Virus record (IMG/VR): IMGVR_UViG_3300012931_000759
Location: 124,001-188,000 of that record
Reading direction: 5' to 3' (one strand)
Length of the DNA: 64,000 bases
The notes under the pieces were generated by a model that saw only the letters and a list, made by a program, of their open reading frames with translations, had not been told where the DNA came from and did not search any database. The position numbers and the translations under genes were made by a program. Of this stretch, positions 30,691-63,911 are shown in pieces; within the stretch, counting starts at the first letter, position 1; every line of letters begins with the position of its first letter.

Positions 30691-31698
30691 ATGTCCCAGC
30701 CGATTTCGAAACGTGCCCTGAACAGGCCGCTAGCGGCCCTTGTTCATAAAATACAGCCGCTGGTCAGTGGCATGCTCATGTTCACTAAGAGGGTTGGCGG
30801 CGAGACCGAGGAGAATTTGTCCGCCCAGATGGAGACCATGCGCGGCTACCTCCTAGAGATGGGCTGCCTACTCGAAAAGCACGATTCGTTGGTCTGCCGC
30901 AGTGCCGCAGTTCCCGTCCTGGTGCGACTAGCCGATCAGCTTGACGCTATCGGCGCGCATGCGATGGCTGACGTAGCCGACGAGGCTGCCCAGCTCATCA
31001 AAACCGCCCAGGCATCCCAGGCCCCACAGCAGCAGCTCGCCCAGCAGCAACAGCAACAAACCACACTCCAGCAGCTTGCCGACAGGTTCATCAACATTCA
31101 CACCGAGATGCTCAACGCGACCCGCCTGTTCTCGAATCCGGCCACCATCCCGTCCGGTATGAAACGTCTGCTAGACGCAGCCAGGGAGATGGGTTTGGCT
31201 GCCAACGCGCTGAAACAATCCATCTCCACCACGACCACAACGACTTCTACTCCAATCCCAGCCACCACGTCCGCAGTTCCGGGGGGACCGACCACGGCTG
31301 CTGACGCCGCCAGAGAGCTTGTCGCATTGGCCAACAGGCTGGATGTCGAGGGGAACTACGTGCTCGCCGACTTGGCGGATTGCGCGGCCAAGATGGTGCT
31401 AAAGTTTTCCGACAATCGGGAGCAGGAGGAATCACCGATCAGGCCGGGTCATCTCTCTCCGCTGTCGACGCGCTATTGCCCTGATCACTGTGGCGTACAA
31501 GCTTACAGGGTAGCCGACAGGGTGTTCCAATGTCCTATAGACGGGCGCATGTACGACTACGAGGGCGGGTACGTGGATTACAGCGGACAGAGGGTTCCGG
31601 GTGGCAACATCGCCAACCAGACCCCAACAACGATGCCATACCAGCTGCCACAGCGCTTGTATGACCCGAACCAGTACGTACTGAACACGATGAATTGA
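30691..31698 (+). CDS. Hypothetical putative head protein: PISKRA N-terminus, two LAxxLDxxG tags, Q/T-rich linkers, C-terminal Cys/His domain
   Basis: Motifs visible in the translation. Confidence 0.8.
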   Translation: MSQPISKRALNRPLAALVHKIQPLVSGMLMFTKRVGGETEENLSAQMETMRGYLLEMGCLLEKHDSLVCRSAAVPVLVRLADQLDAIGAHAMADVADEAAQLIKTAQASQAPQQQLAQQQQQQTTLQQLADRFINIHTEMLNATRLFSNPATIPSGMKRLLDAAREMGLAANALKQSISTTTTTTSTPIPATTSAVPGGPTTAADAARELVALANRLDVEGNYVLADLADCAAKMVLKFSDNREQEESPIRPGHLSPLSTRYCPDHCGVQAYRVADRVFQCPIDGRMYDYEGGYVDYSGQRVPGGNIANQTPTTMPYQLPQRLYDPNQYVLNTMN

Positions 31699-31705
31699 GG
31701 AACGC

Positions 31706-32464
31706 ATGGCTTTCCCGAAAATAATGGAGCATCCGGACAAGAATCGGATCGTAAAATGGCTGCTTGAGGGCAAGGGTGTGCGCAGGGTCAGCAAGATGCT
31801 GCGCGAGATGTATCCCGACGACAAGGAGAAGCAGTTGTCGGTGCCTACGCTCCAGGATTTTAGGAAGAAGCACCTCAAGTTGGAGGGTGACGCGCTGGAG
31901 GACGTAAAGAAGGCGAAACGCCAGCATGACGGCGAGAAGACACTACAGAAGGAACACACGCAGGTTAAAAACCTGCCGACCTATAAGCAGAAGCTGAACG
32001 AAGTTGTTGATCTCCATCTCGACATCAAGAGAGGTTTGGTCGGCATGGAGAAACTGATCACAGCGCGGCTTGAGGATTTGTTCGATATGGCGGCCCGTGG
32101 CGAGGCCACGATCGACAAGGAAAAGCTGTTACAGGGCTATTTCGACCGCTATTTCATGATGATAGACAAGTGGGCCAAGTACGTGGACAAGGTGGCTGAC
32201 TTCAAGATCGAGGCAAATGTCAACGTGACGGTCATACAGGATCAGATGGCCGTCCTGAGGCAAGTTGTGTACGAGCTTCTGCGAGAGATGGACCCCGAGC
32301 TGGCCATCGGGTTCCTGGATCGGCTGAATAACCACGTGCGCACCCTGACGTACAGGCCTACCACGCCGTCAAAGGCGGCCTCGCTAGCGACCTTGCGCGA
32401 CGAAATCGCAGCGCTACCGGATGCCCAAATTATTGACGCTCCGGAGGGATACGATGCCGACTAG
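31706..32464 (+). CDS. Hypothetical helical protein with N-terminal HTH-like segment (possible terminase small subunit)
   Basis: IVKWLLEGKGVRRVSKML..LSVPTL HTH-like pattern; function inferred only from context. Confidence 0.65.
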   Translation: MAFPKIMEHPDKNRIVKWLLEGKGVRRVSKMLREMYPDDKEKQLSVPTLQDFRKKHLKLEGDALEDVKKAKRQHDGEKTLQKEHTQVKNLPTYKQKLNEVVDLHLDIKRGLVGMEKLITARLEDLFDMAARGEATIDKEKLLQGYFDRYFMMIDKWAKYVDKVADFKIEANVNVTVIQDQMAVLRQVVYELLREMDPELAIGFLDRLNNHVRTLTYRPTTPSKAASLATLRDEIAALPDAQIIDAPEGYDAD

Positions 32465-34055
32465 CTATGTCGACGACATGATGGGCGACATTTCCGGAGA
32501 CGGGATGGACGACGAGTTGCGGCAGCTAGCCGACGACGACGAGACTATGCTTGGTCGGCTTGGCGTCGGGGACGAACGCGAGCGTAACCTGGCTTTCTAT
32601 CTGGATCATTTTCTCGACGAGTTCTGCGCCGAGATGGGCATGCCAGTTCCGGACGACAGGCGGGCCGTTGTGGCTGCCGCTTTCTCCGACCTGCGAGGCG
32701 GAGCCAATGTCGGACTTGCGGACATCAGGAGCGCTCTGTACCGCGCGATGGGCGGGAAACGGTCCGTGAAAAGGGCTTATCCGAATGTCACCGGAATCAT
32801 GGAGGCGAACGTCAAGCCGCAGCGTGATGTTTCGAAGTGGGTCAGGACGCTCGGCGACATTCGCGCAGCAGAGCGCATTGGGGAGGGTGGTGACGGGGTC
32901 AAGAGAAGACTTACCGAGGAGTGGGATCCTGTGGAGAAACAGGACTTCGAGCAGTGGCTCCGCTTCTACGAGCGGGGCGATCATGAGAAATACGCCGGCA
33001 TTGAGTCAGAGGTTGCGTCTCCTATTCCAGCCGGGCAGGCCTCCCCGGTTACTCAGCATCCAGTAGTCGGCCCTCGGCGCGGTCGCCCCAAGGCGGATAC
33101 TCGCACACTAGCCGACAACCAGAAGGCCCTGATTGGGAGGCTCGATGCCGCCAAACGCCTCCTGCGTCTCTTTAGGCCGCCTATTTGGCCGCAGGAGCGC
33201 TGGTATAGCATCTACCGGGCGCTGTCGGATCTTGAGCAAGAGATTGTCAGTTTGCGCACCACAGCATCGATGCGCGATAGGATCATCAGAACCGCTGGAC
33301 TGTTGACAAGGGCTGGTTTCCGGGAGGGTGCTGATGTGCTGCTTAAGGTTGCACAGCCCCCGGACGAGGATGTGGCGAGCCAGATCGAGAAGGCGTTGAC
33401 TGGTCGCGAGTACGACATCAAGTCGCCCGGTGGCTCAGCTGAACTCCCTGGCGGGATGTCGGATATTCCGTCCACGCCCGCTCCAGAGGCGGGAGGAACA
33501 ATCCCGGTCCCTCCGGAAAGCGAATCTGCGCCTCCAGCGTCGCCAGAAGGCATGCCGCCGGAGGCCATGGGGAAACTGCCGGAACCGCCGCCACCCCCTG
33601 AGCCCGAGGCCGAAGCCGAAAAGCCTAAGCCCAAAAAGGATGAGAACCCCTACGCCGGGGCCACCACTAAGGATATCCTTGAAGTTCTTGAGCCGCTCAT
33701 GAAGAGGTTTAAGGAGCGGGAGATTGTTAGGCAGCTGTCCAAGGCGGACATGATGATGGATGCCTTGAACATCGTCTCCTATTTCCCGGAACTTGGGGAG
33801 GCCATCGGCCGCCTGATCGAGACGGACTCGTATGTTGGCACGCGGCTGGAGAAAGTCATCGGCAAGCTGCGAGGAGGCCTGAAAGAGGAGGAGGGAAAGG
33901 GCAAGAAAAAACCAGAGCCTCCTAGCATCGAGATGGGTCCGCCGCCCGAGGAGGTTGCTACCGAGGTATCCGAGAAGCCGACCGAGGAGACGGCGGTGGA
34001 GGTTGGCGAGCGTCCGACTGCGGCCCCTGAAGCGCCTGCGGCGCCTGGAGTGTGA
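32454..34055 (+). CDS. Hypothetical putative head protein with Pro/Glu-rich linkers and one helical tag
   Basis: GGAGG before ATG 32454; IIRTAGLLTRAGFREGADVLLKVA. Confidence 0.8.
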   Translation: MPTSYVDDMMGDISGDGMDDELRQLADDDETMLGRLGVGDERERNLAFYLDHFLDEFCAEMGMPVPDDRRAVVAAAFSDLRGGANVGLADIRSALYRAMGGKRSVKRAYPNVTGIMEANVKPQRDVSKWVRTLGDIRAAERIGEGGDGVKRRLTEEWDPVEKQDFEQWLRFYERGDHEKYAGIESEVASPIPAGQASPVTQHPVVGPRRGRPKADTRTLADNQKALIGRLDAAKRLLRLFRPPIWPQERWYSIYRALSDLEQEIVSLRTTASMRDRIIRTAGLLTRAGFREGADVLLKVAQPPDEDVASQIEKALTGREYDIKSPGGSAELPGGMSDIPSTPAPEAGGTIPVPPESESAPPASPEGMPPEAMGKLPEPPPPPEPEAEAEKPKPKKDENPYAGATTKDILEVLEPLMKRFKEREIVRQLSKADMMMDALNIVSYFPELGEAIGRLIETDSYVGTRLEKVIGKLRGGLKEEEGKGKKKPEPPSIEMGPPPEEVATEVSEKPTEETAVEVGERPTAAPEAPAAPGV

Positions 34056-34058
34056 GAT

Positions 34059-34829: not shown

Positions 34830-34885
34830 GATTAATGGTGGTTAGCAATACAAATACAAATACAAAGAGAGAGAGGACATTACTG

Positions 34886-36186: not shown

Positions 36187-36195
36187 AATCGCGAG

Positions 36196-37477: not shown

Positions 37478-37487
37478 GGTGGGAGAT

Positions 37488-38168
37488 ATGGTTTTCGGCA
37501 GGGAATACGAGATAGCCAGACCGTCTGCCGTACCGGAGTGGCTGCGCGAGTTTGCTGAAAGCGCGTTACGCCGATCGGCCGACGGCTCGAATCCGTTCCA
37601 GGAACTTAAGAGCTTATTCCAGAGGAATAAGGATCTTGGCGCCATCGAGGAGCGTGTCCGCGAATTGAAGGACCGGATCGGCTTGAGTTTACTTGCGGGA
37701 CACGAGGCCGACCATCCCCCTGTTAAGACGGCCTCTGTAGCTTTCCGGCCGGACATGGCGAGGTTGGTTCGCTTGGCCAATTGGCTCGACAAGTGTGGTC
37801 TCGAAAACGAGGCGCGGGACGTGGATAATATGATCTGCGTGCGGGCCGCCCAGGCAAAGGCAGACGGTGTGTTTGCCAAATACCCTAAACTGAAGTCTTT
37901 CTTGGACAATGTGATCCGGTCGCGCGGTGGCCACGTGACGGTGCCCGCCCTCCTAAAGATGGTGAGGGACGAACGTCCCGATGAGAGTGTGGCGGCCTCC
38001 GACGAGTCGCTGAGGGAGTACGTGGAGAGCATGATCCGCAGCGAGAAGCGCGAGGTGGGCGACGCCAGCGACAGCCTTGCTGGTTTTGGTGTGGGGCTCT
38101 CCGTGCCCGAGGTTGATCTCCAGGAAGACAACAAAATGTTCGAGCCAGCAAAACCAGCCAACAGATAG
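37488..38168 (+). CDS. Hypothetical protein with helical tag
   Basis: GAGGTGGGA before ATG 37488; VKTA then LVRLANWLDKCGLENEARDVD. Confidence 0.75.
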   Translation: MVFGREYEIARPSAVPEWLREFAESALRRSADGSNPFQELKSLFQRNKDLGAIEERVRELKDRIGLSLLAGHEADHPPVKTASVAFRPDMARLVRLANWLDKCGLENEARDVDNMICVRAAQAKADGVFAKYPKLKSFLDNVIRSRGGHVTVPALLKMVRDERPDESVAASDESLREYVESMIRSEKREVGDASDSLAGFGVGLSVPEVDLQEDNKMFEPAKPANR

Positions 38169-38171: not shown

Positions 38172-38348
38172 ATGATAGTGCCGAACACGCGGCGCCTAAA
38201 ACGCTTCGCGGTGATATACAAGGGAAGATCTTGCGGCCCGACCACGTCGTGGCCGCAAACCATTTGGTTTGATAAGGAGGAGGAGTACGATGAGGCGGTT
38301 CGCAAGCTGAAGACGCTGGTCGTGGATCTGAATGCCAATGCCGATTAG
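38172..38348 (+). CDS. Small 58-aa hypothetical protein (below the ORF-track cutoff)
   Basis: ATG 38172 to TAG 38348 fills the gap before the terminase (MIVPNTRRLKRF...). Confidence 0.4.
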   Translation: MIVPNTRRLKRFAVIYKGRSCGPTTSWPQTIWFDKEEEYDEAVRKLKTLVVDLNANAD

Positions 38349-40182
38349 GACAATTAACACCAGCCGTTGGGCTCCGGAGAACAGCTTCGAAGAGCTGAAG
38401 GCCGAACTGATGAAAGTCGATCCGGTCTATTTCGCCGAGTCATACCTGACGCTCGACGGAAATCCGATGAAGCTGACGGGCAATGGATGGAAGTTCATCG
38501 CCGACATCTACCGCTACATCATGTCCAAGGCGGTGTCGCCCGACGGCAAACCGATCGTCATCGTCAAGGGTCGCCAGGTCGGCGCCACAACGATGGCCTC
38601 GGCGCTGGAATTACACATGGTCGCCAGTGGTGTGTTTGGGCAGGGCGGAGCCAGGCCTATCCGCGTCATGCATGCTTTCCCACAGTTGGAGCTGATGCAT
38701 GCCTTCTCCAAGGACAAGCTGGAGAAAATGGTTCGTGAGTCGGCGATGGTTCCGGATCCGGATGATCCGCGGCACCAGATGAGGCCTTTCGTCGAGACTA
38801 TGAAAGATGCCTCGCGTGAGGCTTCCGACAGCCTGACCTACAAACAGTTCAAGCACGGCAACACCCTGTGGTGTGATTCCATAGGAAATGAGGGGGTTAG
38901 GGTGCGCGGCCGTACCATCGATGCCATCTTTTTCGACGAGGCCCAGCTCATGACGAAGCAGGCGGTCGACACGGCGGTCAAGTGTACCACGCGAGCCCAG
39001 TATGGTCCACAGCCTGGCGGCATCCAGGTCTACTTCGGCACCCCGGAGCATAAGAACTCTCACTTCTACGAAATGTGGGAAAACTCCGACCAACGCCGGT
39101 ATTACCTCGGCTGCGCTGAATGCCACCGCTACTTCCTTCTATACACTCCTGGCTCCGATAAGTGGGAGAAGGACATCTGGCTATACGAGAATGTGGTGAA
39201 ATGTCCTAACTGCGGTCACGAGCAGGACAAGGTAGAAGCAATCGAGCGCGGCAAATGGCTCCCTGCCCCCGGTAAAGAGGACGCTAAGATCGTCGGTTTC
39301 CACTTCAACCAACTCTTTATTCCGGAGTTTACGAAGGAAAAGATCCTCAATGAGAGCCCGGCGTATAACCCGATGAAGAGGGAGGTGGACTGGAACAATG
39401 AGGTGCTTGGCGAGTTTCACACGGGAACCGGCCTACCAATCACCCGCGAGGAGATCTATAAAACCTGCCGGGACCCTATGCGCACGATGGCCAAGCATAT
39501 CACCAAAGACGAGCGAAAGATGGTGTACATGGGTATCGACTGGGGAGGTAAGCCGGATATCGACGACGTAAAGACCCGTGGACAGTCCTTCTCCTGCGCA
39601 GTTGTGATCTCGGTAGAACACGACGGCCGGGTGTTGATAGAGTTCGCCCAGAAGTTAAAGAAGCTAGACCTACAGTCCAAGATGCAGTTTGTCGAGGAAA
39701 TGATGCGCCTGTACAACGTGCGGATGGTCGGGGCGGACATTGGGTATGCCGAGGACATTTCGGGTGAACTGAAAGCACGCCTAGGCGACCGCTTCAAGAC
39801 AGTGCGGAACTCCGCCCAGGTTCTCAGTGGCACCAAGTACCGGGAGGACGAGTTGGAGATCGTCATTGACAAGGATAAGTGGATTGGCGATATGTTCAAT
39901 CTGCTGCGTCGCGGCGGCGTTCGTTTCCCGTGGGGAAGCTACGAGCGCGTGGCCTGGCTGGTAGACCATTGCTGCTCCATGGAGAGCAAGCAGACCATCC
40001 GCGCGGGCATGCCGCATACCATGTTTGTCAAGGGGAAAACACACAACGACGGGCTGATGGCGCTCATTTACGCCTATGTCGCATACAAGTTCGAGCAGAC
40101 GCATGGCTTCAAGGCCACGCCTGGCAATGCGGTCGCGAAGTCGGTGAAGCCGGTCCTGGCGTTCGTTCCGCGCATGAGATGA
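38332..40182 (+). CDS. terL: Terminase large subunit (lambda GpA-like, with Zn-binding cysteines)
   Basis: IVKGRQVGAT Walker A, IFFDE Walker B, GTP coupling motif, CAEC/CPNC, GFHFNQL, MGIDWG nuclease motif. Confidence 0.9.
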   Translation: MPMPIRTINTSRWAPENSFEELKAELMKVDPVYFAESYLTLDGNPMKLTGNGWKFIADIYRYIMSKAVSPDGKPIVIVKGRQVGATTMASALELHMVASGVFGQGGARPIRVMHAFPQLELMHAFSKDKLEKMVRESAMVPDPDDPRHQMRPFVETMKDASREASDSLTYKQFKHGNTLWCDSIGNEGVRVRGRTIDAIFFDEAQLMTKQAVDTAVKCTTRAQYGPQPGGIQVYFGTPEHKNSHFYEMWENSDQRRYYLGCAECHRYFLLYTPGSDKWEKDIWLYENVVKCPNCGHEQDKVEAIERGKWLPAPGKEDAKIVGFHFNQLFIPEFTKEKILNESPAYNPMKREVDWNNEVLGEFHTGTGLPITREEIYKTCRDPMRTMAKHITKDERKMVYMGIDWGGKPDIDDVKTRGQSFSCAVVISVEHDGRVLIEFAQKLKKLDLQSKMQFVEEMMRLYNVRMVGADIGYAEDISGELKARLGDRFKTVRNSAQVLSGTKYREDELEIVIDKDKWIGDMFNLLRRGGVRFPWGSYERVAWLVDHCCSMESKQTIRAGMPHTMFVKGKTHNDGLMALIYAYVAYKFEQTHGFKATPGNAVAKSVKPVLAFVPRMR

Positions 40183-49980: not shown

Positions 49981-50025
49981 ATATCAGTTTGTGTAAATAT
50001 TTGAGATCGCTCAACATTATGGAGT

Positions 50026-53000: not shown

Positions 53001-55344
53001 CGAAATGGAGACCCACAACAGCCATGGCATCCGATTCGACCCCGAAACGACGCTGAAGGAGGGGGATCGCATTGTTGTGAAGGCCCTGCTGATGCCGCGT
53101 AACTCCTCCTGGCCTCCCAATAAGTTCGTTAGCCATATCCGGCAAGGTCTGAAGTGGGACATCGGCGATGCCAAGGTCTACTACTCGGCGCTGCGCCGCC
53201 GCCAGAAACCTAAACCCTCGGACGAGCAGGTTATGGCCTTCTGGACGAAAAAGATGCAAGAAGCCAACATGACCGAGAAACTTGAGAAGTTTTATGAGAC
53301 GGTATACGACAGGCTGCGCCACAAGGAGGACCTCTCGGCTTTCGAGATAAGGCTGTTGGAGCAGTTTGAGCAAGCCAAGGAACAGGAGGCGTCCGACACC
53401 ATGGTTTCCGAAGCCAAGGATCCCCTCGCAAAATACCAGGGCAAGCGCGAATTCGACAAGACCACGGAGCCGAAAGGTAAGGAGTCGGAGGGTGGGAACA
53501 GGTACCGCTTTGTCATCCAACTACACCATGCCAAGAAAGCGGGTGACCATTACGATTTACGCCTAGAGAACGACGAGGGCGCATTGTCGTCGTGGAGTAT
53601 CCCGAAGCACCGGCTACCCAAGGGCAAGGAGAAGTTGCTCGCTGTCAGGACCGAAGACCATCCGGTCGAATACCTGAAGTTCAAGGGCGAAATCCCGGCG
53701 GGCGAGTATGGGGTCGGCACGATGGAGATCCACGACTCGGGAACCTACGAGGAGATCGAGGCCGGCAAGACCAAGATCGTCTTCTGCTTGAAGGGAAAGA
53801 AGGAGAAGGGGGCCTACAAGTTATTCCGGGCAGGCGAGGGAAACAAATGGATGGTGATGGAACATACAGAAAATAAACAGGAAAAGAAAGAGGCAGCCTG
53901 TGGCTCGAGTGTAACTCTATTCTCCAAACGAATTGGCAGTGTTCCGTTGTCAAAGATGGCGGCGCACAGTGGTGCGATGTTGGCTCTCATGGCTCCGTCG
54001 GCCATTGCCAGGAAGATGCGCAAGGCCAAGATGGTAGAGGACGAAGATCTGTCTGATACCCTTCACATGACTCTGTTGTACCTCGGGAAAGCTGCTGACC
54101 TCAGCAAAGAGACGCTGGAAGCAGTCCGGAAGGCGGCAGAGAAGGTGTGCGAGCGGCACGACCCGCTAAAGATGGGTGTTTCGGGTGCCGGGACATTCAC
54201 TCCGGAAGAAGATGGCACTCCGGTATACGTGGTACCTAATGCGAAGGGATTGAGCGCTCTACAGGCCGACCTGGAGAATGTTATCGGCAGCATCGTCGAC
54301 CTGCCCTCTGAGCACGGCTGGGTTCCGCATATGACTGTATGCTACTGCCGCGACGGGAAACCGGAACTCCCAGACCTGACGGAGAAACTGGAGTGGACCG
54401 CTGATAAGGTGCGTCTACAGGCTGGTGACGAGAAGATCGCGGACATTCCCATTGGCCGCAGGAAAAAGGGTGGAAGCGAGCTTCCGCTGTCCAGGCGGGC
54501 TGCGCTGGAGCGGTTGCCGATAGCCGCTGATCCTGTAATGTGGACGGATGAACAGTTGGTGGAAGCCGTCCGTCGACCGGAACTGTTCGGAAACGACAAA
54601 GATCGGTATCGGGCAGCAGTCGAACAGTTGGCCAAACGCGGTCTGGTGAAAAAGGTGGAGCCAACAGACATCGGCGAATGGCGTGAGCGCGGTTGGTGGC
54701 TACTAATGTGGGCGGGGATCCCACTCGCTTTCTACAACAACGATGCTGCTGCCAGTATGGCTAAACGGCTGCTCGCAGAGGATTTCGCCAAGGACGGCAC
54801 GCAGCCTATTGCTGCGCGTAAGTTTGATCCGATCCATTCCCGTCTGCGTTGGCAACTCGACGAGGTCATGGATCTGGGCCCGGCCGAGGACTACGAGGAG
54901 GCTGATCACCGGCGCGGTAGGGCAGGAACGGCCGTGGATGAACTGGTTACGCATCCTATGTACGCAAAACGGCGCAGGGAATTCGCCGAGAAGGCATTGA
55001 ACATCGCCAAGGCTCCCGCTGGTTTCAGACCGTTCAAAGAGTCGGTTCCCTCAGGTGCGCGACCAACCGAAACTAACGCTGACGCAGCTGAGGCTCGCAT
55101 CACGGACATGCGGTTCGGTAACACCCTGCCGGAGTTTACTGGACCGCTGGTGGATTCCCAGGAGGCTGCGAAGGACGCCGGTGACGAACTGGTCGAGGAC
55201 ACCGCCAAGAGACTTGCCAAGCGGCTGGAGGCCGAGCGGGCCGGTCTAGATCCTGAAAAACTGGCGGACGACGATGCGCTGGAACTAGCCCTGATCGAGC
55301 CGGACGAGGTTCCGCTCTCGAAGCGGACGGAAACATACCAATAA
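50026..55344 (+). CDS. Mosaic protein: DJ-1/PfpI + multi-zinc-finger domain (paralogue of 10351..12372) + LigD 3'-phosphoesterase + 2H phosphoesterase + unknown domain
   Basis: AMICHAP; FVIQLHHA..HYDLRLE..SWSIPK..AVRTEDHP..Y..F.GEIP.GEYG.G; LHMTL and PHMTV. Confidence 0.85.
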   Translation: MVLMVSLRRRILMLVAPKGFFEPEYSASRAVFADRGIDVAVATAGKSAVSAQGTTIRVDLDVADADAKDFDALFVVGGKGMIEFSDDKAAKRILRKFVRVGKPVAMICHAPLLAAKAKVAAGRQMTGWPEIRPDMVASGAKWTGMPVERDGDLFTAVGPEDAESLADILVRRMDGAPTLSEAMLDDNAAMRKLARLWRAAARLDKPMTDEEAERWLTEFERRDEGEEEPPSEPTTPKPVLAPAPKSVPALAAKPKPEPEFTPDPERRDQITHKPKNEWNIVVELRPPRTDGGWPELPETPPVGFPFPAEALKDSPSIRALFQKPETWRALKEIAANPNKSGTIQSYLVPTLVLVIGKAWWEINKRRKQLGNAPFGLFSSDEYKTIQDANVPMEETQIGRAFIALINWQVTKILQFYLATGKIENARLDGYIYDALNKHMVNDAGKRHGFEPKRQPACAYCRSKRVIETTPPFLSQIGTHTVQERNLTRSRPLFKCPTCEDLIETKEQELRLKEQGVRNAEESLRDIAKNVRNTKDNLTKDPDSAELKQRLVNYEAMLASYRPQVEELAKERNTLKGEIQNRRNMIGVPYSHLSCINEACPGAAIPLTFVDWDNSFWKTPAGDVARRDLASFYHIEKSPEGQKAEDAPQESVQPTSERAGKKPPPWMWHIPFRCPFDGLVFTPHEAFGKGRVGEDGTRLGGLFVNPPRATRWWKPMSLEQQRMPDDEGQKQRIEEIRSLTGIETTTDSPDFLRSQEMKQENAWLADRLREDILRQRENFMKERGTLEGHREVKLRRTMFDALLEWAYLHPIHLVAFYSARSQATQKPQTHVPVGTEPVVDGKSGEVKEHLDEKNIKMSPKQAERIISAIIQVWFEKMLAEKDGLTILKGRPGKGRSGKLTGQGNYLAIKEVDGVEPDGFFVTTVQRALDGQLEALCNLRTTSPKTRGAGYYPAPWMALVQGIWDYDGPAERMGISMPLVEGQKLVAGKRSHLHEMETHNSHGIRFDPETTLKEGDRIVVKALLMPRNSSWPPNKFVSHIRQGLKWDIGDAKVYYSALRRRQKPKPSDEQVMAFWTKKMQEANMTEKLEKFYETVYDRLRHKEDLSAFEIRLLEQFEQAKEQEASDTMVSEAKDPLAKYQGKREFDKTTEPKGKESEGGNRYRFVIQLHHAKKAGDHYDLRLENDEGALSSWSIPKHRLPKGKEKLLAVRTEDHPVEYLKFKGEIPAGEYGVGTMEIHDSGTYEEIEAGKTKIVFCLKGKKEKGAYKLFRAGEGNKWMVMEHTENKQEKKEAACGSSVTLFSKRIGSVPLSKMAAHSGAMLALMAPSAIARKMRKAKMVEDEDLSDTLHMTLLYLGKAADLSKETLEAVRKAAEKVCERHDPLKMGVSGAGTFTPEEDGTPVYVVPNAKGLSALQADLENVIGSIVDLPSEHGWVPHMTVCYCRDGKPELPDLTEKLEWTADKVRLQAGDEKIADIPIGRRKKGGSELPLSRRAALERLPIAADPVMWTDEQLVEAVRRPELFGNDKDRYRAAVEQLAKRGLVKKVEPTDIGEWRERGWWLLMWAGIPLAFYNNDAAASMAKRLLAEDFAKDGTQPIAARKFDPIHSRLRWQLDEVMDLGPAEDYEEADHRRGRAGTAVDELVTHPMYAKRRREFAEKALNIAKAPAGFRPFKESVPSGARPTETNADAAEARITDMRFGNTLPEFTGPLVDSQEAAKDAGDELVEDTAKRLAKRLEAERAGLDPEKLADDDALELALIEPDEVPLSKRTETYQ

Positions 55345-56873: not shown

Positions 56874-57581
56874 ATGGAGAAGCAGGCTAACATAGTCAAG
56901 ATCGCCTTCATCCGCAAAGTGAAAGGTAAGGGATGGTGCGTTTTTGCCCACCGCAAAACCAAAAGCGGAAAACGCCAGAATTTCGGATGCTACAAATCGA
57001 AGGCGGCCGCGAAAAAACGCCTTGGTCAGATCTATTTCTTCAAGGGTCGCGGAGCTTTGGATGGCATGATCGGCATTGCGGATGACTTGGATCGCAGGGG
57101 ACTTCTCCATTTCGCGGACGCCCTGATGGATAGTCTGGAGCAGATCGTGGCTGCCAGCCTAGGCGAGATATCTGAGCGCCCGGTCTCCGTGACCATCGGC
57201 AAGATCGCCTCACTGCTGGAGAAAAAGGGCGAGGCAGCGCTCGCAGAGCGGCTGGACAGTCTTCTGCCAGCCGTGCTGGATGTGGAGTGTGGCGGAGTTG
57301 ACTGCCCCGACTGCCCGGACATGGTGGTCGAGGCCGATCTCGGCCGCTGCGGCGGCATCACTAGGCAGGTGTCCGCCGACAAGCTGTATGCGATGGCGGC
57401 CCGCTGCCGCCAGATGTACCGCGAGGGCATGATAGACGAGAACAGCTTCGAATACAGGAAGTTCCGTGAGCTGCGCTATATGCTGCGCACTGGTTTCCTG
57501 TTCCCGCCCCCTGAGGGACAGGGCGTCCCAAAGGACGCCGCGAACTGGTGGGACCATTTCGAGAAGGAGGCGGGCGAATGA
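56874..57581 (+). CDS. Hypothetical putative head protein with basic N-terminal module and two helical tags
   Basis: EKQA/VKIA; IRK..GWCVF..NFGCY..AKKRL.QI.FFK; IADDLDRRG, IASLLEKKG. Confidence 0.8.
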   Translation: MEKQANIVKIAFIRKVKGKGWCVFAHRKTKSGKRQNFGCYKSKAAAKKRLGQIYFFKGRGALDGMIGIADDLDRRGLLHFADALMDSLEQIVAASLGEISERPVSVTIGKIASLLEKKGEAALAERLDSLLPAVLDVECGGVDCPDCPDMVVEADLGRCGGITRQVSADKLYAMAARCRQMYREGMIDENSFEYRKFRELRYMLRTGFLFPPPEGQGVPKDAANWWDHFEKEAGE

Positions 57582-59016: not shown

Positions 59017-60137
59017 ACCTGCGCCAGAGGTTATTGGTCCTGCGCCCCGCCATGGCGGCGGCCGCCCAGAAGGTGGTCGACGAGTGGCAGCTGGACGAGG
59101 AGGGGCTTGATCCGGAGCTGGGCGCGGGCGGGATCTGCGACCGCGTGGCCGACGCCATCACCGACACGCTGTACTCCCATCTCGGCGATGTCGAGGTGGC
59201 GCTTGGCGCTCCGGAGGGCGAGGACCACCAGTGGGTTGTTGTGAGTGACGGGAAGGAGGCCTTTGTGGTCGACATCCCGCCAGGCGCGTACGAAACCGGC
59301 GGCGGCTACGCCTGGACAAAGATCGAAGGCGCCCGGATCGAACCAAGTGATGTGTTCGTAGGCCCGATCGACCTAGAACTAGCGCAAGACCTTCTCAAGG
59401 AGGGTGGACGGATGCATAGACTCGTTGTCCTGGCCGAGGCGCTCGAGGCGCTCGGCGAAGCGAACAGTGCCGCGCTCGCGCGCGTGCTGGCGGTCCCCGA
59501 ACTCGTCAGCGAGGCACAGGGCTGGGCTGATCGGTTTTTTAAGGCGAATCCCGAACTACTGGACAGGGCTGAGCAATTCGCTGAGGCCAAGGGTATCTCA
59601 GTCGGGCAATATCTCGGCCATCTTGAGCAGCTTCCGGAGGATATCGGCCGCAAAAAGGTCCATCAGGATCTCGGTTATGTCGGAATGGGCGCGGCGTGGT
59701 CCCCGACCGGTAAACCGACCGCAAAACCGGAGCCTAAGCCGGAGAAGCCGGAGCCGAAACTACAGCCGGAGACCGAACTCCGGTGGCCGTTCCCGCCGCC
59801 GAATGTCCTCCAGGACAGAAAGGCCTTCATTGCCGCCGCCCTCGGATGGGCGATGGGCGAGGGCAGGGACCTCTACGGGCGCATGTACGGTTCGCAGGGG
59901 CTGCGCGACACGGGCAGGAAGGGGGAGGTGGGGGCTGCGCGCGCCTATCTGCGATACCTCATGAAGGATGTGGCGCCGCGCCTGGCCGCCACCCTGCAGG
60001 CCAAATGGAAGGAGGCCTCGACCAAGGGCGACACGGAGGCGCAGCGCACGCTGAGAGCCTGGTGGTCGTCGCTGTCGGACGTGTGGGAGCTGATCCAGGA
60101 TATGGTCGGCAACATCAACGAATATTCTATGGAATAG
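59013..60137 (+). CDS. Two-module hypothetical protein; N-terminal module has a possible papain/transglutaminase-like C-H-D triad
   Basis: GGICD..HQWVV..VVDI; second module starts at an internal AAGGAGG..ATG (59412). Confidence 0.7.
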   Translation: MNLRQRLLVLRPAMAAAAQKVVDEWQLDEEGLDPELGAGGICDRVADAITDTLYSHLGDVEVALGAPEGEDHQWVVVSDGKEAFVVDIPPGAYETGGGYAWTKIEGARIEPSDVFVGPIDLELAQDLLKEGGRMHRLVVLAEALEALGEANSAALARVLAVPELVSEAQGWADRFFKANPELLDRAEQFAEAKGISVGQYLGHLEQLPEDIGRKKVHQDLGYVGMGAAWSPTGKPTAKPEPKPEKPEPKLQPETELRWPFPPPNVLQDRKAFIAAALGWAMGEGRDLYGRMYGSQGLRDTGRKGEVGAARAYLRYLMKDVAPRLAATLQAKWKEASTKGDTEAQRTLRAWWSSLSDVWELIQDMVGNINEYSME

Positions 60138-60140
60138 TTA

Positions 60141-60815: not shown

Positions 60816-60818
60816 GCC

Positions 60819-61202
60819 ATGGCGACTCCACCGCTCTCCAAGAGGAGCAATTCCACACCGCTGCTTCCCATCTCGAAGCGGGCGCAGGATCCCGTGCGCC
60901 GCACGGCTGAGTCCATCCTGAAGATCATCACCTTCATCCTTTTCCGCGTGGCGCCGAAAGACAAGACACGATACCTACAGCGTATTAGAGGAAAAATACT
61001 AAGGATTCCAACAGGGCAAGTGAGTCTGAAAAAGTTGCCGCAAACAGCGGCCATTGGACAAGCTATCAGTTTGACCAAAAACATCTTGTCCGGTTTGAAC
61101 CCCTTCTTTGTCAAAAGAGTGGTGGACGAACTGGCGAACCTTATGCTTCTACAGGTGCCCGTTCGCCAGACTCTACCAATCCAGCGACCTAGGGTCCAAT
61201 GA
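60819..61202 (+). CDS. Small basic hypothetical protein with tandem PLSKRS/PISKRA N-terminal motifs
   Basis: MATPPLSKRSNSTPLLPISKRA; GGAGG upstream. Confidence 0.75.
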   Translation: MATPPLSKRSNSTPLLPISKRAQDPVRRTAESILKIITFILFRVAPKDKTRYLQRIRGKILRIPTGQVSLKKLPQTAAIGQAISLTKNILSGLNPFFVKRVVDELANLMLLQVPVRQTLPIQRPRVQ

Positions 61203-61855
61203 TGAAAACCTGTACGCGCTGTAACCAACCAAAATCCAAAGACGAATTCTACGCAGATCATAGGGTTTACGACGGACGACGAAGTGTTTGTAAACAGTGT
61301 CAAGATACTGTGAATAATCAATATCGCACTCAGCATAAGAATGAGGTGGAGGCACAGCGGGCCGCCTATCGCGAAGCGCACAAAAACGAGAACCAGGCGT
61401 ATCAGAAGCAATATCGTGCCATCCACAGACAAGAACTATCTGAGAAAAAACGGGCATACTACAATCAGTCCGATGTGAGGGATGCGAAACAACTCCATGA
61501 CAGGGCGTACCATGCTAGTAACAAAGAAAGTCGCGCGGAGACCATGAAGCGTTGGCGGCAAACTGACGCCGGACAGGCCTCCAGAGCAAATTCGTGTGCC
61601 AAACGTCGCTCCAGGGTTGGAGACAACATCATCTCAACAACCGAGTGGCAACTCATCATGTCCAATGCCAACTGGCATTGCGTTTATTGTGACATCGCGC
61701 TCACCCCAGAAAACCGTAGTCTGGATCATGTGGTGCCTCTATCGAAAAACGGATCACATTGCGTAGACAATCTAGTGGCATGTTGTAGAACATGTAATTC
61801 CAGTAAAAAAGACAAACCTGTCCTGGAATTTGTCTCCAACAGAGGTCAGATATGA
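61199..61855 (+). mobile_element. Free-standing HNH endonuclease
   Basis: CTRC..CKQC N-terminus; CVYC..DHVVPLS..G.H..NLV.CC..CN..K. Confidence 0.88.
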
Positions 61856-63345
61856 TTCCCCTCAGCAAACGCGCGATCCAGGTCGTCATCGAGCCGCTTG
61901 ATCCTGCGGTCCAGCAGGCTGTGACGCGCATCAATGCGCGCGACCCTGCTCTTCTTGCGCGTGTCCACAAGATTGTGGTACACCCAGGTGGCGGAGCCGA
62001 GTTGGGTCATGTTCAATCCGGAAAAGGACATGATCCGCAGGAGATCCACCTTTTCAAGGGGCGCATAGAGCAGATGGTTCGTCAGCAGACCAGCGCCACC
62101 GGCGTGAAGCCAACCCCGACGGATTTCGCCCAGGCTTTGGAACAGGCAATAGTGGAAGTAATCGGCCATGAGGCCGGGCACATCGGGCCGGAGCGGCCGA
62201 TTGTGCCGGGAGCGCAGCCTTTCCTTGGGGAACCGGAGGCTGAGACGAAGGCCAAGGAGACCGTCCGGAGGATCTATCCCGGAGCCGTCGCGCACGCGGC
62301 CATCGAACTGGACGACATCAGACGGAAATTCATGCCAGATGCCCCCATGGGCGAGCCGGATCTGGCCTTTGTGGCAAAGGTTGCCGCCGGAAACGGCGCT
62401 GGCGCCCTGCGCGACGGGTTGAGGATCTTGCGCCACGGCAGCGTGCCTGTGGCTTTGGCTATGGGACAGGCCTGCGTGTTCAACAGCCAGGTCGCGCGTC
62501 GCACGGATGTGGCCAGGAAGTTGGGCTTCCTAGTGAGCCTGTTTGGGGCGCTGCCGAACTCCAACGATTTCGCGATGGCGCTTGCCGCCTGCCAAACGGA
62601 CAACGGCCTCGAGCCGACAGGGAAGCTCGACCGTCCAACCATAGCGCACCTGCGCGCCCGCATGGCGCCCTCCGAGGAGTTCCCGCGCAACTTCGGCATG
62701 GTGGCCGAGGGACTGTATCGCGGAAGGCAGCCCGACAGCATCGGGCAGCTCGCGGCCCTGCGCGACAGGCTGGGCGTCCGCCGCGTTGTGACGCTGAACG
62801 ACGACGGCCCACCGATCGCCGACTGGTGCCGCCAGCTGGGCCTGGGGCACCTCCACGCGATGCTGTCGTCCGGCGCTCCCCAGGAGCCCGGATGGCAGGT
62901 TTTCGGCCCCGAGCTGTCGGATTTCCTGCTTGAGACCCCCACATTCGTCCATTGCCGCCATGGAGCCGACCGGACGGGCGGCGTCGTGGCGCGGTGCCGC
63001 ACCGAGATGGGTTGGCCCTGCGACCTGGCATACGCCGAAGCCAAAGCCTTCGGTTTCAAGGACCGTTTCCCCGACATGGTCGACCGGTTTACCGACGCCT
63101 GCGGACACGACCCGCACGGGCACCGGCACCCGCCCATCGACACCGCCCTGATCCGCCGCATCATGGGGGCGGAGCTTGCCGCCAACGCCCCGCGTCCTTC
63201 GGTCGAGCAGGATCTGCTCGAGCCCACCCCGTTTGACCTCCACTACACCACCGACAACAACAGCTACGAGAGTGGGATCGATACGATCCTGTCGCCATAT
63301 TCCATCATGTCTATTCCGACAGGTTTTCCGGGGGCGGGGAGATGA
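61852..63345 (+). CDS. Mosaic protein: HExxH module + peptidoglycan-binding-like helix pair + tyrosine/dual-specificity phosphatase
   Basis: PLSKRA N-terminus; IGHEAGH; CQTDNGLEPTGKLD..T; LYRG.QP, FVHCRHGADRTG (CX5R). Confidence 0.8.
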   Translation: MIPLSKRAIQVVIEPLDPAVQQAVTRINARDPALLARVHKIVVHPGGGAELGHVQSGKGHDPQEIHLFKGRIEQMVRQQTSATGVKPTPTDFAQALEQAIVEVIGHEAGHIGPERPIVPGAQPFLGEPEAETKAKETVRRIYPGAVAHAAIELDDIRRKFMPDAPMGEPDLAFVAKVAAGNGAGALRDGLRILRHGSVPVALAMGQACVFNSQVARRTDVARKLGFLVSLFGALPNSNDFAMALAACQTDNGLEPTGKLDRPTIAHLRARMAPSEEFPRNFGMVAEGLYRGRQPDSIGQLAALRDRLGVRRVVTLNDDGPPIADWCRQLGLGHLHAMLSSGAPQEPGWQVFGPELSDFLLETPTFVHCRHGADRTGGVVARCRTEMGWPCDLAYAEAKAFGFKDRFPDMVDRFTDACGHDPHGHRHPPIDTALIRRIMGAELAANAPRPSVEQDLLEPTPFDLHYTTDNNSYESGIDTILSPYSIMSIPTGFPGAGR

Positions 63346-63911
63346 GTTGTGAACTGACCCTCCTTGTACACCTAGCCGACGAGTTGGACAGGCGCGGAAT
63401 GCTCTGGGAAGCTGATGAGGTCGACCACATAGTGCGCTTGGCTGTCGGCGGGCCGGATGTAAGGGACTGGTTGCGCCGCCAGTATGAGCGTCTGCGCCGA
63501 CTCTTTTCCAGGAAAAAGACTGATCCAGGTGCCGCGAAGACGTACGACGCCGCTGCGGCGAACCGTCTGGATGACATGTTGCGTCGCAAACAGAGTGGCC
63601 CGCCGGATGAGCGCGTGTTTCTCTGGTTTTGCCAGCAGTTCCCGAATTCCTGTCCAGCTTGTCGCGGCCGACACGGCCGCATGCGAACCATGCGCCAATG
63701 GCGCGGGGAAGGCCTGCCAGGCCCCATGGTCTGTGAAAAGGACGATTGCGCGTGCCACCTTGTGCCGCTGCTGCCAGGAGGTGTTGCCCAGATGGATGAG
63801 GATGGCGACATCATGGCGAACATTACCGGCCTCCAGGAGGACAGCTCTGGCCACAGCATGAATCAAGGATTTGCTCTCGAGCCCTTCTTCAGCGACACAA
63901 CAACTAGTTGA
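63342..63911 (+). CDS. Helical-tag protein with MuF/gp7-like Cys-rich C-terminal module
   Basis: LADELDRRG..EADEVD; CPAC..RHG..W...GLPG...C..DC.C.L.P. Confidence 0.65.
   Translation: MSCELTLLVHLADELDRRGMLWEADEVDHIVRLAVGGPDVRDWLRRQYERLRRLFSRKKTDPGAAKTYDAAAANRLDDMLRRKQSGPPDERVFLWFCQQFPNSCPACRGRHGRMRTMRQWRGEGLPGPMVCEKDDCACHLVPLLPGGVAQMDEDGDIMANITGLQEDSSGHSMNQGFALEPFFSDTTTS

What the first reader, a model, noticed from the sequence alone, without database searches (positions are those of the whole stretch)
30700..63425. Candidate virion 'cargo-tag plus cleavage' system shared across many unrelated head-block proteins
Seen in sequence: two short motifs are scattered through the head block and, by eye, absent from the replication block (0-27.8 kb). 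One is a helical tag (10 copies in 8 ORFs). The other is P-[LI]-S-[KR]-x-[AST] (9 copies in 5 ORFs). Many junctions also show a hydrophobic/basic-[KR]-x-A (IKTA, VKTA, LKVA, VKRA, VKMA, RKEA, LKEA, RKQA, VKIA). Established: T4 and phiKZ-type phages target internal head proteins with short propeptides and mature them with a prohead protease at short consensus sites. Inference: this phage family uses a modular tag to load diverse enzymes into the capsid and cuts after K-x-A to release them, which would be a programmable protein-delivery system. I do not know of a description of these motifs but cannot search for one.
Basis: partly seen in the sequence, partly recalled or inferred. Interest (0 to 1): 0.9.

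Follow-up and report, generated by a model that had tools for sequence, protein, structure and literature searches.

The report
Two peptide modules in huge-phage proteins
A huge uncultivated phage marks the boundaries of its multi-enzyme proteins with a short conserved peptide (F-x-L-S-K-R-A) and carries a separate 31-residue helical hairpin on many small unknown proteins; both are real and apparently undescribed, but neither capsid loading nor cleavage is shown.

Summary
The window is part of a 340-kb uncultivated phage contig. Both motifs are real peptide-level features. Both are confined to the terminase/portal side of the window.

1. **Helical tag.** It is a ~31-aa helix-turn-helix hairpin, consensus ΦxxLΦKLA[DN]xLDxxGxx[KE]EA[DN]xΦDxΦΦKKxA.
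   - There are 7-8 solid copies in 5-6 ORFs, plus 2-3 marginal ones.
   - It is conserved in related huge phages and matches about 1,600 protein clusters in metagenomes.
   - It has no Pfam, PHROG, NCBIfam or PDB match.
   - It sits on small unknown proteins, not on the enzymes.

2. **P-L-S-K-x-A.** This is the local form of a family-wide motif, Φ-x-[LI]-S-K-R-A.
   - The strict form occurs 9 times against 0.1 expected in the window. The core occurs 40 times against 2 expected across 14 loci.
   - It marks the N-terminal edge of cassettes in polyvalent multi-enzyme proteins (DNA ligase, LigD phosphoesterase, 2H phosphoesterase, zincin-phosphatase, ferritin).
   - It persists when cassettes are swapped, fused or split, and at the N-termini of stand-alone genes.

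3. **Generic K-x-A** is at chance level.

**Best reading:** a polyprotein-like joint that acts as a protease recognition site, a docking signal, or both. The candidate protease is a zincin-like domain that is itself bracketed by the motif. The hairpin is most likely a separate docking module. Packaging and cleavage remain untested.

The parts
30910..31002 (+). Helical hairpin tag, copy 1 of ORF 30691-31698
   Evidence: Window matrix 60 bits. Independent HMM i-E 3.8e-9. The AF2 model shows helix 65-86, a turn, then helix 90-108.
31309..31401 (+). Helical hairpin tag, copy 2 of ORF 30691-31698
   Evidence: Window matrix 59 bits. Independent HMM i-E 1.8e-7. AF2 shows helices 203-220 and 223-243 at pLDDT 82-93.
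37755..37847 (+). Helical hairpin tag in ORF 37473-38168, the gene just upstream of the large terminase
   Evidence: Window matrix 65 bits. Independent HMM i-E 1.8e-9. The tag is at the same place in orthologs next to TerL in L003, L011, L012, L013, L015 and L016.
44918..45010 (+). Helical hairpin tag at the N-terminus of ORF 44900-46081, just downstream of the portal region
   Evidence: Independent HMM i-E 6.4e-5. An N-terminal tag is conserved in the orthologous post-portal ORF of L004, L006, L008, L009, L012, L014, L015 and L016.
57057..57149 (+). Helical hairpin tag, copy 1 of ORF 56874-57581
   Evidence: Window matrix 55 bits. Independent HMM i-E 9e-4. Conserved in the L018 ortholog.
57186..57278 (+). 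Helical hairpin tag, copy 2 of ORF 56874-57581
   Evidence: Window matrix 47 bits. Independent HMM i-E 3.8e-4.
59412..59504 (+). Divergent hairpin tag in ORF 59013-60137
   Evidence: Window matrix 52 bits. Not significant with the independent HMM. Conserved in the L018 ortholog.
63354..63446 (+). Helical hairpin tag at the N-terminus of ORF 63342-63911
   Evidence: Window matrix 62 bits. Independent HMM i-E 5.7e-7.
33273..33365 (+). Marginal tag-like segment in ORF 32421-34055
   Evidence: Only 11.6 bits and not found by the independent HMM. A related segment scores 20 bits in the L016 ortholog.
30700..30717 (+). Junction motif PISKRA at residues 4-9 of ORF 30691
   Evidence: Absent from the shorter L015 ortholog.
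46093..46113 (+). Junction motif variant PSLSRRA at residues 4-10 of polyvalent ORF 46084-49980
   Evidence: The ortholog in L015/L018 starts M-Y-L-PISRHA.
48757..48774 (+). Junction motif PLSKLA, residue 892 of ORF 46084, a few residues before the C-terminal module
   Evidence: The same module ('..EPG.LYFP..') is preceded by [LI]SK[RH]A in L004, L006, L013, L016 and L024. The site has decayed in L015. The module has a weak LigD_Prim-Pol hit, E=0.018.
53944..53961 (+). Junction motif PLSKMA between the LigD phosphoesterase and 2H/LigT domains of ORF 50026-55344
   Evidence: LigD_N at residues 1165-1268, motif at 1307, 2H domain at 1341-1464. Alignment with L018 and L023.
54484..54501 (+). Junction motif PLSRRA between the 2H/LigT domain and the C-terminal module of ORF 50026
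   Evidence: Invariant in the window, L018 and L023, although the cassette on one side or the other differs.
55312..55329 (+). Junction motif PLSKRT, five residues before the stop codon of ORF 50026
   Evidence: L018 ends with PLSKRA...PLSQRT-KTYQ-stop, and L023 lacks this tail.
60831..60884 (+). Tandem junction motifs PLSKRS and PISKRA at the N-terminus of ORF 60819-61202
   Evidence: In L023 a ferritin domain lies between the two motif copies.
61858..61875 (+). Junction motif PLSKRA at residues 3-8 of ORF 61852-63345
   Evidence: Nearly invariant in about 40 homologs of 38-83% identity, whether N-terminal or internal. Disordered in the AF2 model.
61876..62301 (+). Zincin-like domain (HExxH plus E) of ORF 61852, the candidate processing peptidase
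   Evidence: H106, E107, H110, E127 and E131 are invariant in 35 homologs. AF2 pLDDT is 84. Foldseek hits are weak, but six of the top twelve are zinc metallopeptidases. No Pfam or PDB sequence hit.
61199..61855 (+). HNH homing endonuclease gene inserted exactly at a junction motif, between ORFs 60819 and 61852
   Evidence: Pfam HNH. Relatives P0161, P0165 and P0197 encode the two flanking ORFs as one protein, with the motif at the joint.
46084..49980 (+). Polyvalent protein 1 (1298 aa): ATP-dependent DNA ligase domain plus further modules
   Evidence: Pfam DNA_ligase_A_M, E=1.4e-31.
50026..55344 (+). Polyvalent protein 2 (1772 aa): DJ-1/PfpI, LigD 3'-phosphoesterase, 2H phosphoesterase and a C-terminal module
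   Evidence: Pfam hits. The ortholog is fused with protein 1 into a 2718-aa protein in L024 and split in two in L018.
38332..40182 (+). Large terminase subunit (context)
   Evidence: Pfam GpA_ATPase, E=5.8e-19. tblastn matches phage terminases.
40195..44451 (+). Portal protein interrupted by two inteins (context)
   Evidence: PHROG portal, E=1.6e-45. Hint and LAGLIDADG domains.

Best explanation
The region holds two separate peptide modules. Both belong to the head-gene neighbourhood of a family of 300-460-kb uncultivated phages.

**(A) Φ-x-[LI]-S-K-R-A (written P-L-S-K-x-A in this phage)** is the fixed joint of a cassette system.
- It sits in a disordered stretch a few residues before the start of each module.
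- The modules belong to large multi-enzyme 'polyvalent' proteins: DNA ligase, LigD-type phosphoesterase, 2H phosphoesterase, a zincin-phosphatase protein, ferritin and CCA-type nucleotidyltransferase.
- Most likely it is the recognition site of a phage-encoded endopeptidase that cuts these proteins into separate modules, as in a viral polyprotein.
- The motif is also kept at the extreme N-terminus of stand-alone genes. So it probably also serves as a binding signal in its own right, comparable to the T4 capsid-targeting sequence.
- The best candidate enzyme is the zincin-like domain of ORF 61852, which is itself bracketed by the motif in relatives.

**(B) The 31-residue hairpin** (two helices, an invariant Gly turn and two invariant Asp) is an independent protein-protein docking module.
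- It is carried in one to three copies by small proteins of unknown function.
- Lone hairpins would need a partner helix pair. They are therefore expected to pair with each other or with a common receptor in the head-assembly machinery.

**Shown:** the motifs, their enrichment, their conservation and their position at module boundaries.
**Inferred:** cleavage, the identity of the protease, packaging into the capsid and delivery into the host.
For: **Junction motif**
- The strict form occurs 9 times against 0.10 expected in the head block.
- The core [LIF]S[KR][RKHQ]A occurs 40 times against 2.1 expected in 100,622 residues of 14 related loci, with F preferred two residues before the [LI] and P one residue before it.
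- The codons vary, so selection acts on the peptide.
- The motif sits between Pfam domains.
- Window, L018 and L023 carry different cassettes between invariant motif copies.
- A ferritin domain sits between the two tandem copies in L023.
- Relatives fuse ORF 60819 and ORF 61852 at the motif, and in the window an HNH gene sits at that exact point.
- In 47 homologs of ORF 61852, the motif lies two residues before the conserved domain in nearly all full-length members. This holds whether the motif is N-terminal or lies after 100-480 residues of other domains. Several homologs have a second copy at the far edge of the domain.
- Residues 1-7 are disordered in the AF2 model.
- That domain has an invariant HExxH plus E. 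Its best, though weak, structural matches are zinc peptidases.
- Processing of virion-packaged polyvalent proteins by embedded zincins is an established proposal (PMC5512222).

**Hairpin**
- An independent HMM finds 7 copies, all on the head side.
- It is conserved in orthologs flanking TerL and the portal in 13 related loci.
- Three more copies lie in two ORFs next to the prohead protease/scaffold gene.
- 1,601 cluster representatives match at E<=1e-3, mostly with 2-3 copies each.
- 58 of 239 copies are at the extreme N-terminus.
- Conservation stops sharply 16 residues after the Gly.
- AF2 predicts helix-turn-helix hairpins that pack into a ROP-like four-helix bundle.
Against: - There is no proteomic or experimental evidence. 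No cultured relative exists.
- Not every module boundary has the motif. Examples are the L018 split before the LigD domain and the start of ORF 50026.
- N-terminal and C-terminal copies, which lie 3-5 residues from a protein end, make little sense for cleavage alone.
- The zincin assignment rests on a sequence signature and on Foldseek E-values of 0.14-2. There is no Pfam hit, including to the MPTase family of polyvalent proteins.
- One internal site (PLSKLA, nt 48757) is not conserved in the 83%-identical relative L015.
- The hairpin also occurs in the ORF upstream of TerL, which may be a small terminase and therefore not a cargo protein.
- The link between the hairpin and heads is by gene neighbourhood only.
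Confidence: 0.45

Rival explanations
1. The junction motif is only a short linear docking or packaging (or ejection) signal that labels each module. The polyvalent proteins stay uncut.
For: - The motif is kept under strong selection at the extreme N-terminus of about 25 stand-alone orthologs.
- It also occurs 5 residues from a C-terminus.
- Cleavage there would remove only a few residues.
- The motif lies in a disordered segment, as short docking motifs do.
- Some polyvalent proteins, such as the N4 virion RNA polymerase, are packaged unprocessed (PMC5512222).
Against: - One label per protein would be enough for packaging, yet nearly every cassette has its own.
- Fused and split versions of the same genes interchange freely at the motif. 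That is easiest to explain if the products end up the same.
- A peptidase-like domain is bracketed by the motif.
Confidence: 0.25
2. The helical element is the capsid-loading tag for diverse enzymes. The prohead protease cuts after K-x-A to release them.
For: - The tag is often N-terminal: 58 of 239 copies.
- Its last turn has a weak K-K-x-A, after which conservation vanishes.
- In a few proteins the tag tail reads F-[LI]-S-K-H-A, which overlaps the junction motif pattern.
- A prohead protease gene is nearby.
- A few tag proteins elsewhere carry ferritin, or by eye 2H-like, domains.
Against: - Tag-bearing ORFs in the window have no enzyme domain. The enzymes lack the tag.
- K-x-A is at chance frequency.
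- The K and A positions of the tag tail are only 32-39% conserved.
- Only 4-5 of 32 members of the largest tag family have an LSKRA-like site between the tags and the C-terminal domain.
- The protease-scaffold protein lacks the consensus [LI]-S-K-R-A in four phages; only non-conserved loose matches occur.
Confidence: 0.12
3. The hairpin is a general-purpose oligomerisation or TPR-like structural element with no specific link to capsids. Its clustering near head genes reflects only where fast-evolving accessory genes sit.
For: - The profile also hits a true TPR-type repeat protein, P0001.
- The hairpin packs into an ordinary four-helix bundle in the model.
- It occurs in a protein upstream of TerL that may be a terminase subunit.
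- Most tag proteins have no known function.
Against: - All solid copies in 64 kb, plus three in the next 10 kb, lie on the head side. None lies in 9,228 residues of replication and chaperone genes.
- The positions are conserved in orthologs next to TerL, the portal and the protease.
- No Pfam TPR model matches even at E<=10.
Confidence: 0.3
4. The junction motif mimics a host protease site, as staphylococcal phage 80alpha proteins mimic the L27 N-terminus cut by host Prp.
For: - The published L27 motif is MLxx(D/N)LQ(F/L)F'A(S/H)KK (PMC9405229).
- Aligned on Ser-Lys, F-P-L-S-K-R-A resembles F-F-A-S-K-K-G.
Against: - The upstream (D/N)-L-Q element is absent from all 40 instances.
- Pro would occupy the residue before the cut.
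- The host is unknown.
- This is a resemblance only.
Confidence: 0.04
5. The motifs are chance matches, low-complexity sequence or a DNA-level repeat.
For: None beyond the short length of the motifs.
Against: - Shuffle tests.
- Codon variation between copies.
- An independent HMM.
- Conservation across phages with 62-83% terminase identity.
Confidence: 0.01

Closest known systems
Polyvalent proteins of phages and conjugative elements (Iyer, Burroughs, Anand, de Souza, Aravind 2017; PMC5512222)
   Same: - Very large proteins join several unrelated nucleic-acid-repair and modification domains.
- They are encoded beside the portal and terminase genes.
- Domain content is mosaic between relatives.
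- A zincin-type peptidase is associated, and is proposed to process the protein before or after packaging.
   Different: - That work describes no conserved joint peptide.
- Here a specific 7-mer marks cassette boundaries and survives fusion, fission and cassette exchange.
- The peptidase-like domain here does not match the Pfam MPTase model of that family.
T4 capsid-targeting sequence plus gp21 prohead protease
   Same: - A short N-terminal peptide is shared by unrelated proteins of the head module.
- A prohead protease is encoded nearby.
- The concept combines targeting with removal.
   Different: - T4 cuts after [LI]-x-E. The motif here has no Glu and is basic.
- Here the motif is also internal and C-terminal.
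- The scaffold lacks the consensus motif.
- Nothing is shown experimentally.
phiKZ / SPN3US head maturation (gp175 / gp245; PMC10052503, PMC5694885)
   Same: - Giant phages with many head and ejection proteins.
- Several of these are trimmed at a short consensus by the prohead protease.
   Different: - Those sites end in Glu and remove long N-terminal propeptides of 20-254 residues.
- There is no homology with the proteins here.
- No cassette joints are involved.
Viral polyprotein processing by an embedded protease (picornavirus 3C, potyvirus NIa)
   Same: - A short conserved site precedes each module.
- The protease module is flanked by its own sites.
   Different: - This is a dsDNA phage.
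- Modules are also encoded as separate genes that keep the site at their N-terminus.
- Cleavage is unproven.
TPR and ROP-like helical hairpins; the helix-turn-helix coat-binding domain of the P22 scaffolding protein
   Same: - The tag is a ~31-34-residue amphipathic helix-turn-helix with small residues at the turn.
- It is predicted to pack into four-helix bundles.
   Different: - Copies are single and dispersed, not a tandem array.
- No TPR model matches.
- It has a conserved acidic face, whereas the P22 domain is basic (the P22 comparison is from memory and was not tested).

Membership tests
Polyvalent proteins (Iyer et al. 2017) | Two or more unrelated effector or enzyme domains in one polypeptide | tested here: met
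   ORF 50026 has DJ-1/PfpI, LigD_N and a 2H phosphoesterase. ORF 46084 has a DNA ligase plus further modules. A 2718-aa fusion occurs in L024.
Polyvalent proteins (Iyer et al. 2017) | Encoded in a phage with a portal-terminase system, next to the head genes | tested here: met
   TerL is at 38332, the portal at 40195 and the polyvalent ORFs at 46084-55344. The prohead protease lies 2.3 kb past the window end.
Polyvalent proteins (Iyer et al. 2017) | Associated zincin-like metallopeptidase (MPTase) domain | tested here: inconclusive
   An invariant HExxH...E domain is present in ORF 61852 and is fused to other modules in relatives. There is no Pfam hit. Foldseek gives zinc peptidases only at E 0.14-2.
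Polyvalent proteins (Iyer et al. 2017) | Packaged in the virion and delivered with the DNA | not testable with these tools
   The phage is uncultivated. No relative exists in 50,697 GenBank phage records beyond about 25% terminase identity.
T4-type capsid-targeting sequence / gp21 processing | Cleavage consensus [LI]-x-E | tested here: not met
   The conserved unit is Φ-x-[LI]-S-K-R-A, with no Glu.
T4-type capsid-targeting sequence / gp21 processing | Short N-terminal peptide shared by unrelated internal head proteins | tested here: inconclusive
   The motif lies within the first 10 residues of four window ORFs (30691, 46084, 60819, 61852) and of about 25 orthologs. Head location is unknown.
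T4-type capsid-targeting sequence / gp21 processing | Prohead protease present, with the scaffold carrying the same sites | tested here: not met
   The protease is present (PHROG 18299 E=1.8e-12; NCBIfam NF045541 E=1.3e-8). The 1326-1385-aa protease-scaffold proteins of four phages lack the consensus [LI]-S-K-R-A and have no conserved motif copy; only scattered loose matches occur.
phiKZ/SPN3US prohead-protease substrates | Cleavage motif ending in Glu, and long N-terminal propeptides | tested here: not met
   The motif here has a different composition and position. The published features are in PMC10052503.
Prp / ribosomal protein L27-type cleavage motif | MLxx(D/N)LQ(F/L)F'A(S/H)KK | tested here: not met
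   Only the S-K-[KR] part is shared. No (D/N)-L-Q lies upstream in any of the 40 instances.
TPR repeat proteins | Match to TPR profiles, and tandem arrays of three or more repeats | tested here: not met
   No TPR family matches any of 35 tags at E<=10. Copies are single or widely spaced.
TPR repeat proteins | Helix-turn-helix hairpin of about 34 residues | tested here: met
   The AF2 secondary structure shows it. The profile cross-hits the TPR-like repeat protein P0001.

The most novel reading that the evidence does not exclude
Φ-x-[LI]-S-K-R-A is a portable 'address and cut here' signal. With it, huge phages load interchangeable enzyme cassettes into the capsid and release them as separate effectors on infection. 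The acidic hairpin proteins act as the internal receptors or adaptors for the basic motif. Together they would form a natural, modular protein-delivery system distinct from the T4 and phiKZ schemes.
Probability: 0.2. Interest if true: 0.85.

Novelty: new variant of a known kind. Interest (0 to 1): 0.6.

Why it matters
**If the joint motif is a processing or loading signal**
- It would explain how huge phages build, shuffle and deploy multi-enzyme 'polyvalent' proteins.
- It would give a sequence rule for predicting their mature products.
- It would offer a short portable peptide for attaching foreign modules in laboratory phage systems.

**The hairpin**
- It defines a large, unannotated protein-module family of about 1,600 clusters at 50% identity.
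- It could be added to domain databases.
- It could be used to flag a class of phage proteins that currently have no annotation at all.

Tried and rejected
**Searches that found nothing**
- Pfam, PHROG and NCBIfam on all tag-bearing ORFs and on the 35 isolated tags: no family.
- tblastn of a two-tag protein against 50,697 phage records: nothing.
- The search for related loci with the 1772-aa protein: only the window's own contig.
- Protein-atlas look-up of ORF 28833: no lead.
- Foldseek of the ORF 30691 model: only generic helical bundles.
- PDB sequence searches with the zincin profile and with the protease domain: nothing.
- Literature searches for the motif string and for polyproteins in huge phages: nothing relevant.

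**Ideas tested and rejected**
- A DNA-level repeat or regulatory site. Rejected because the codons differ between copies.
- Generic K-x-A as a signal. Rejected because it is at chance level.
- A systematic 'tags, then LSKRA, then mature domain' layout in the largest tag family. Rejected because only 4-5 of 32 members show it.
- The prohead protease as the LSKRA enzyme, on the expectation that its scaffold would carry the sites. No conserved site was found; only scattered loose matches occur.
- Prp/L27 mimicry. Rejected because the upstream element is absent.

Full report
**Source and layout.** The window is positions about 124,001-188,000 of IMGVR_UViG_3300012931_000759, a 340-kb viral contig. 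All genes lie on the + strand.
- The first 28 kb encode replication, recombination and chaperone functions. These are DnaE-type polymerase, primase-polymerase, SbcCD, RecA, FtsK-like ATPase, trigger factor, DnaJ and a UDP-glucose dehydrogenase with an intein.
- From 28 kb onward come conserved unknown genes, a CCA/poly(A)-type nucleotidyltransferase, the large terminase (38332-40182) and a portal gene with two inteins (40195-44451).
- These are followed by two giant multi-domain proteins (46084-49980 and 50026-55344), four homing-endonuclease genes and several small unknown ORFs.
- Terminase relatives of 62-83% identity lie on contigs of 116-442 kb. Cultured phages reach only about 25% identity.
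- A prohead protease fused to a long scaffold-like region (1326 aa) lies 2.3 kb beyond the window end (L021:12281-16261). It matches PHROG 18299 'head maturation protease' at E=1.8e-12 and NCBIfam NF045541 at E=1.3e-8. Calling the region a 'head block' is therefore reasonable as a neighbourhood. It does not show that its products are in the virion.

**The helical tag is real.**
- A matrix from the window copies separates seven copies (47-65 bits) from everything else in six frames (17 bits or less).
- To avoid circularity I built an HMM from 219 copies found in unrelated metagenome proteins. It recovers seven copies in five window ORFs (i-E 2e-9 to 9e-4) and none in the replication block.
- A divergent eighth copy (ORF 59013) is conserved in its ortholog. 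Two further candidates are marginal.
- The consensus from 226 copies is [ILFV]xxL[IVA]KLA[DN]xLDxxGxx[KE]EA[DN]x[IVL]Dxh[IL]KKxA. Conservation ends abruptly 16 residues after the invariant Gly.
- AlphaFold models both copies in ORF 30691 as helix-turn-helix hairpins. The best structural neighbour is a ROP-type four-helix bundle.

**How widespread the tag is.**
- It is conserved in relatives at fixed places. These are the ORF just upstream of TerL and the N-terminus of the ORF downstream of the portal. It also occurs in two ORFs next to the protease-scaffold gene.
- A profile search of 1.84 billion cluster representatives gives 1,601 proteins at E<=1e-3, mostly with two or three copies. A few are TPR-like false positives, such as P0001.
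- The ten top hits looked up are unnamed or 'hypothetical' metagenome proteins.
- 58 of 239 copies lie at the extreme N-terminus.
- No Pfam, PHROG or NCBIfam model covers the tag. No GenBank phage carries it at tblastn sensitivity.
Window tag ORFs have no catalytic domain. Among the 110 best tag proteins, only a few have any Pfam domain: zinc ribbons, one ferritin, one AP2 and PG-binding domains.
- 31 of those 110 share a conserved C-terminal zinc-ribbon domain that is also found in ORF 30691.

- In the window there are nine strict matches against 0.10 expected, plus a PSLSRRA variant. Serine is encoded by both TCN and AGC, so selection is on the peptide.
- Four ORFs have the motif within their first ten residues. 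One protein ends five residues after it. The internal copies fall between Pfam domains.
- In more distant relatives the Pro is lost and the core is Φ-x-[LI]-S-K-R-A. Over 14 loci (100,622 residues) the core occurs 40 times against 2.1 expected.

**Three observations define what the motif is.**
1. *Cassette exchange.* Window, L018 and L023 differ in the cassettes that lie between motif copies, while the copies themselves are kept.
   - L018 has an extra domain between the phosphoesterase and the 2H domain.
   - L023 has a different domain in place of the 2H domain.
   - The module that follows PLSRRA in the window follows PFSKRA behind a ferritin domain in L018.
   - The tandem copies at the start of ORF 60819 enclose a ferritin domain in L023.
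2. *Fusion and fission at the motif.* P0161, P0165 and P0197 encode ORF 60819 and ORF 61852 as one protein, with the motif at the joint. In the window an HNH endonuclease gene sits at exactly that point.
3. *Retention at N-termini.* In 47 homologs of ORF 61852, the motif lies two residues before the conserved domain in nearly all full-length members. This holds whether it is N-terminal (about 25 stand-alone orthologs) or lies after 100-480 residues of other domains, such as a CCA-adding enzyme. AlphaFold leaves residues 1-7 disordered.

**Which enzyme might recognise the motif.**
- The domain that follows the motif in ORF 61852 has invariant H106-E-x-x-H110 and E127/E131. In several relatives it has a second motif copy at its far edge.
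- Its model (pLDDT 84) gives only weak Foldseek hits. Six of the top twelve are zinc metallopeptidases. It has no Pfam or PDB sequence match.
- This fits the proposal that polyvalent proteins carry zincin peptidases for self-processing (PMC5512222), but it is not proof.
- The prohead protease is a weaker candidate. Its own 1,000-residue scaffold region lacks the consensus [LI]-S-K-R-A in four phages, and the few loose matches are not conserved. In T4-like systems the scaffold is the main substrate.
- The DJ-1/PfpI domain of ORF 50026 is a further formal possibility. I did not test it.

**Cleavage or docking.**
- Joints before each cassette, free interchange of fused and split forms, and a peptidase bracketed by its own sites all argue for cleavage.
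- The strongly conserved copies 3-5 residues from protein ends argue that the peptide also works as a binding signal. Trimming a few residues has no obvious value.
- The T4 capsid-targeting sequence combines both roles and is the nearest functional analogy. However, the T4 and phiKZ/SPN3US consensus sites end in Glu (PMC10052503), so membership of those systems fails.
- The Prp/L27 motif resembles only the S-K-K part and fails on the upstream element.

**Link between the two motifs.**
- The core motif is also enriched in tag proteins from other lineages, at 15 against 1.0 expected. In a few of them it forms the tail of the tag. So the two features travel together.
- A regular 'tag, site, mature domain' layout is not found.
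- The generic K-x-A rule is at chance level.
- One untested idea is that the acidic hairpin is the receptor for the basic motif.

**Verdict.** Packaging, cleavage and delivery remain inferences.

Noticed in passing
window 40195-44451; L015:11828-14989: The portal gene carries two inteins (Hint plus LAGLIDADG) in this phage. The 83%-related phage has only the first one, so the second insertion is recent.
   Followed up: partly
window 24971-27799: The UDP-glucose/GDP-mannose dehydrogenase gene is interrupted by an intein with a LAGLIDADG domain.
   Followed up: no
window 55668-56864, 58150-59016, 60141-60815, 61199-61855: Four homing-endonuclease-type genes lie within 6 kb, interleaved with the motif- and tag-bearing ORFs. 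Their types are DUF4379 zinc fingers, NUMOD3 plus a Vsr-like domain, GIY-YIG, and HNH. Relatives lack some of them.
   Followed up: partly
window 12384-13700 and 21694-22800: The phage encodes a full-length trigger factor and a DnaJ with its zinc-finger domain. These are ribosome-associated and Hsp40 chaperones.
   Followed up: no
window 34059-34829, 46084-55344: Together the region encodes a nucleic-acid end-repair set. It comprises an ATP-dependent DNA ligase, a weak LigD primase-polymerase match (E=0.018), a LigD 3'-phosphoesterase, a 2H phosphoesterase and a CCA/poly(A)-type nucleotidyltransferase. This looks like a kit against host nucleases.
   Followed up: partly
window 28833-30560: A 575-aa protein shows, by eye, an internal duplication of about 85 residues. 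It is conserved in L015 and has a same-length (575-aa) syntenic counterpart in L020, but has no match in any library or in the protein atlas.
   Followed up: partly
window 31450-31695 (C-terminus of ORF 30691): A conserved C-terminal zinc-ribbon domain (…STRYCPDH…YQCP…GGSVAAQTP…FDSR…) is shared by 31 of the 110 best tag proteins. It defines a widespread family of unknown function.
   Followed up: partly
L021:12281-16261 and L021:18860-20570: The protease-scaffold protein contains two copies of a repeat of roughly 100 residues. It also shares a short 'AHPxGG…DEGxK' element with the 1216-aa tag-bearing protein downstream.
   Followed up: no
window 36569-38168: ORFs 36569-37477 and 37242-38168 overlap in the mechanical ORF list. 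The second most likely starts at 37473 (ATGA overlap), as in the L015 ortholog. In L006 and L016 a single 865-874-aa ORF lies directly upstream of TerL and contains LSKRA joints; it may be the fused counterpart of these two genes.
   Followed up: partly
L020:159-1096: A more distant syntenic relative encodes a sigma-70 region-4 protein and a translation initiation factor IF3 just upstream of the conserved block.
   Followed up: no
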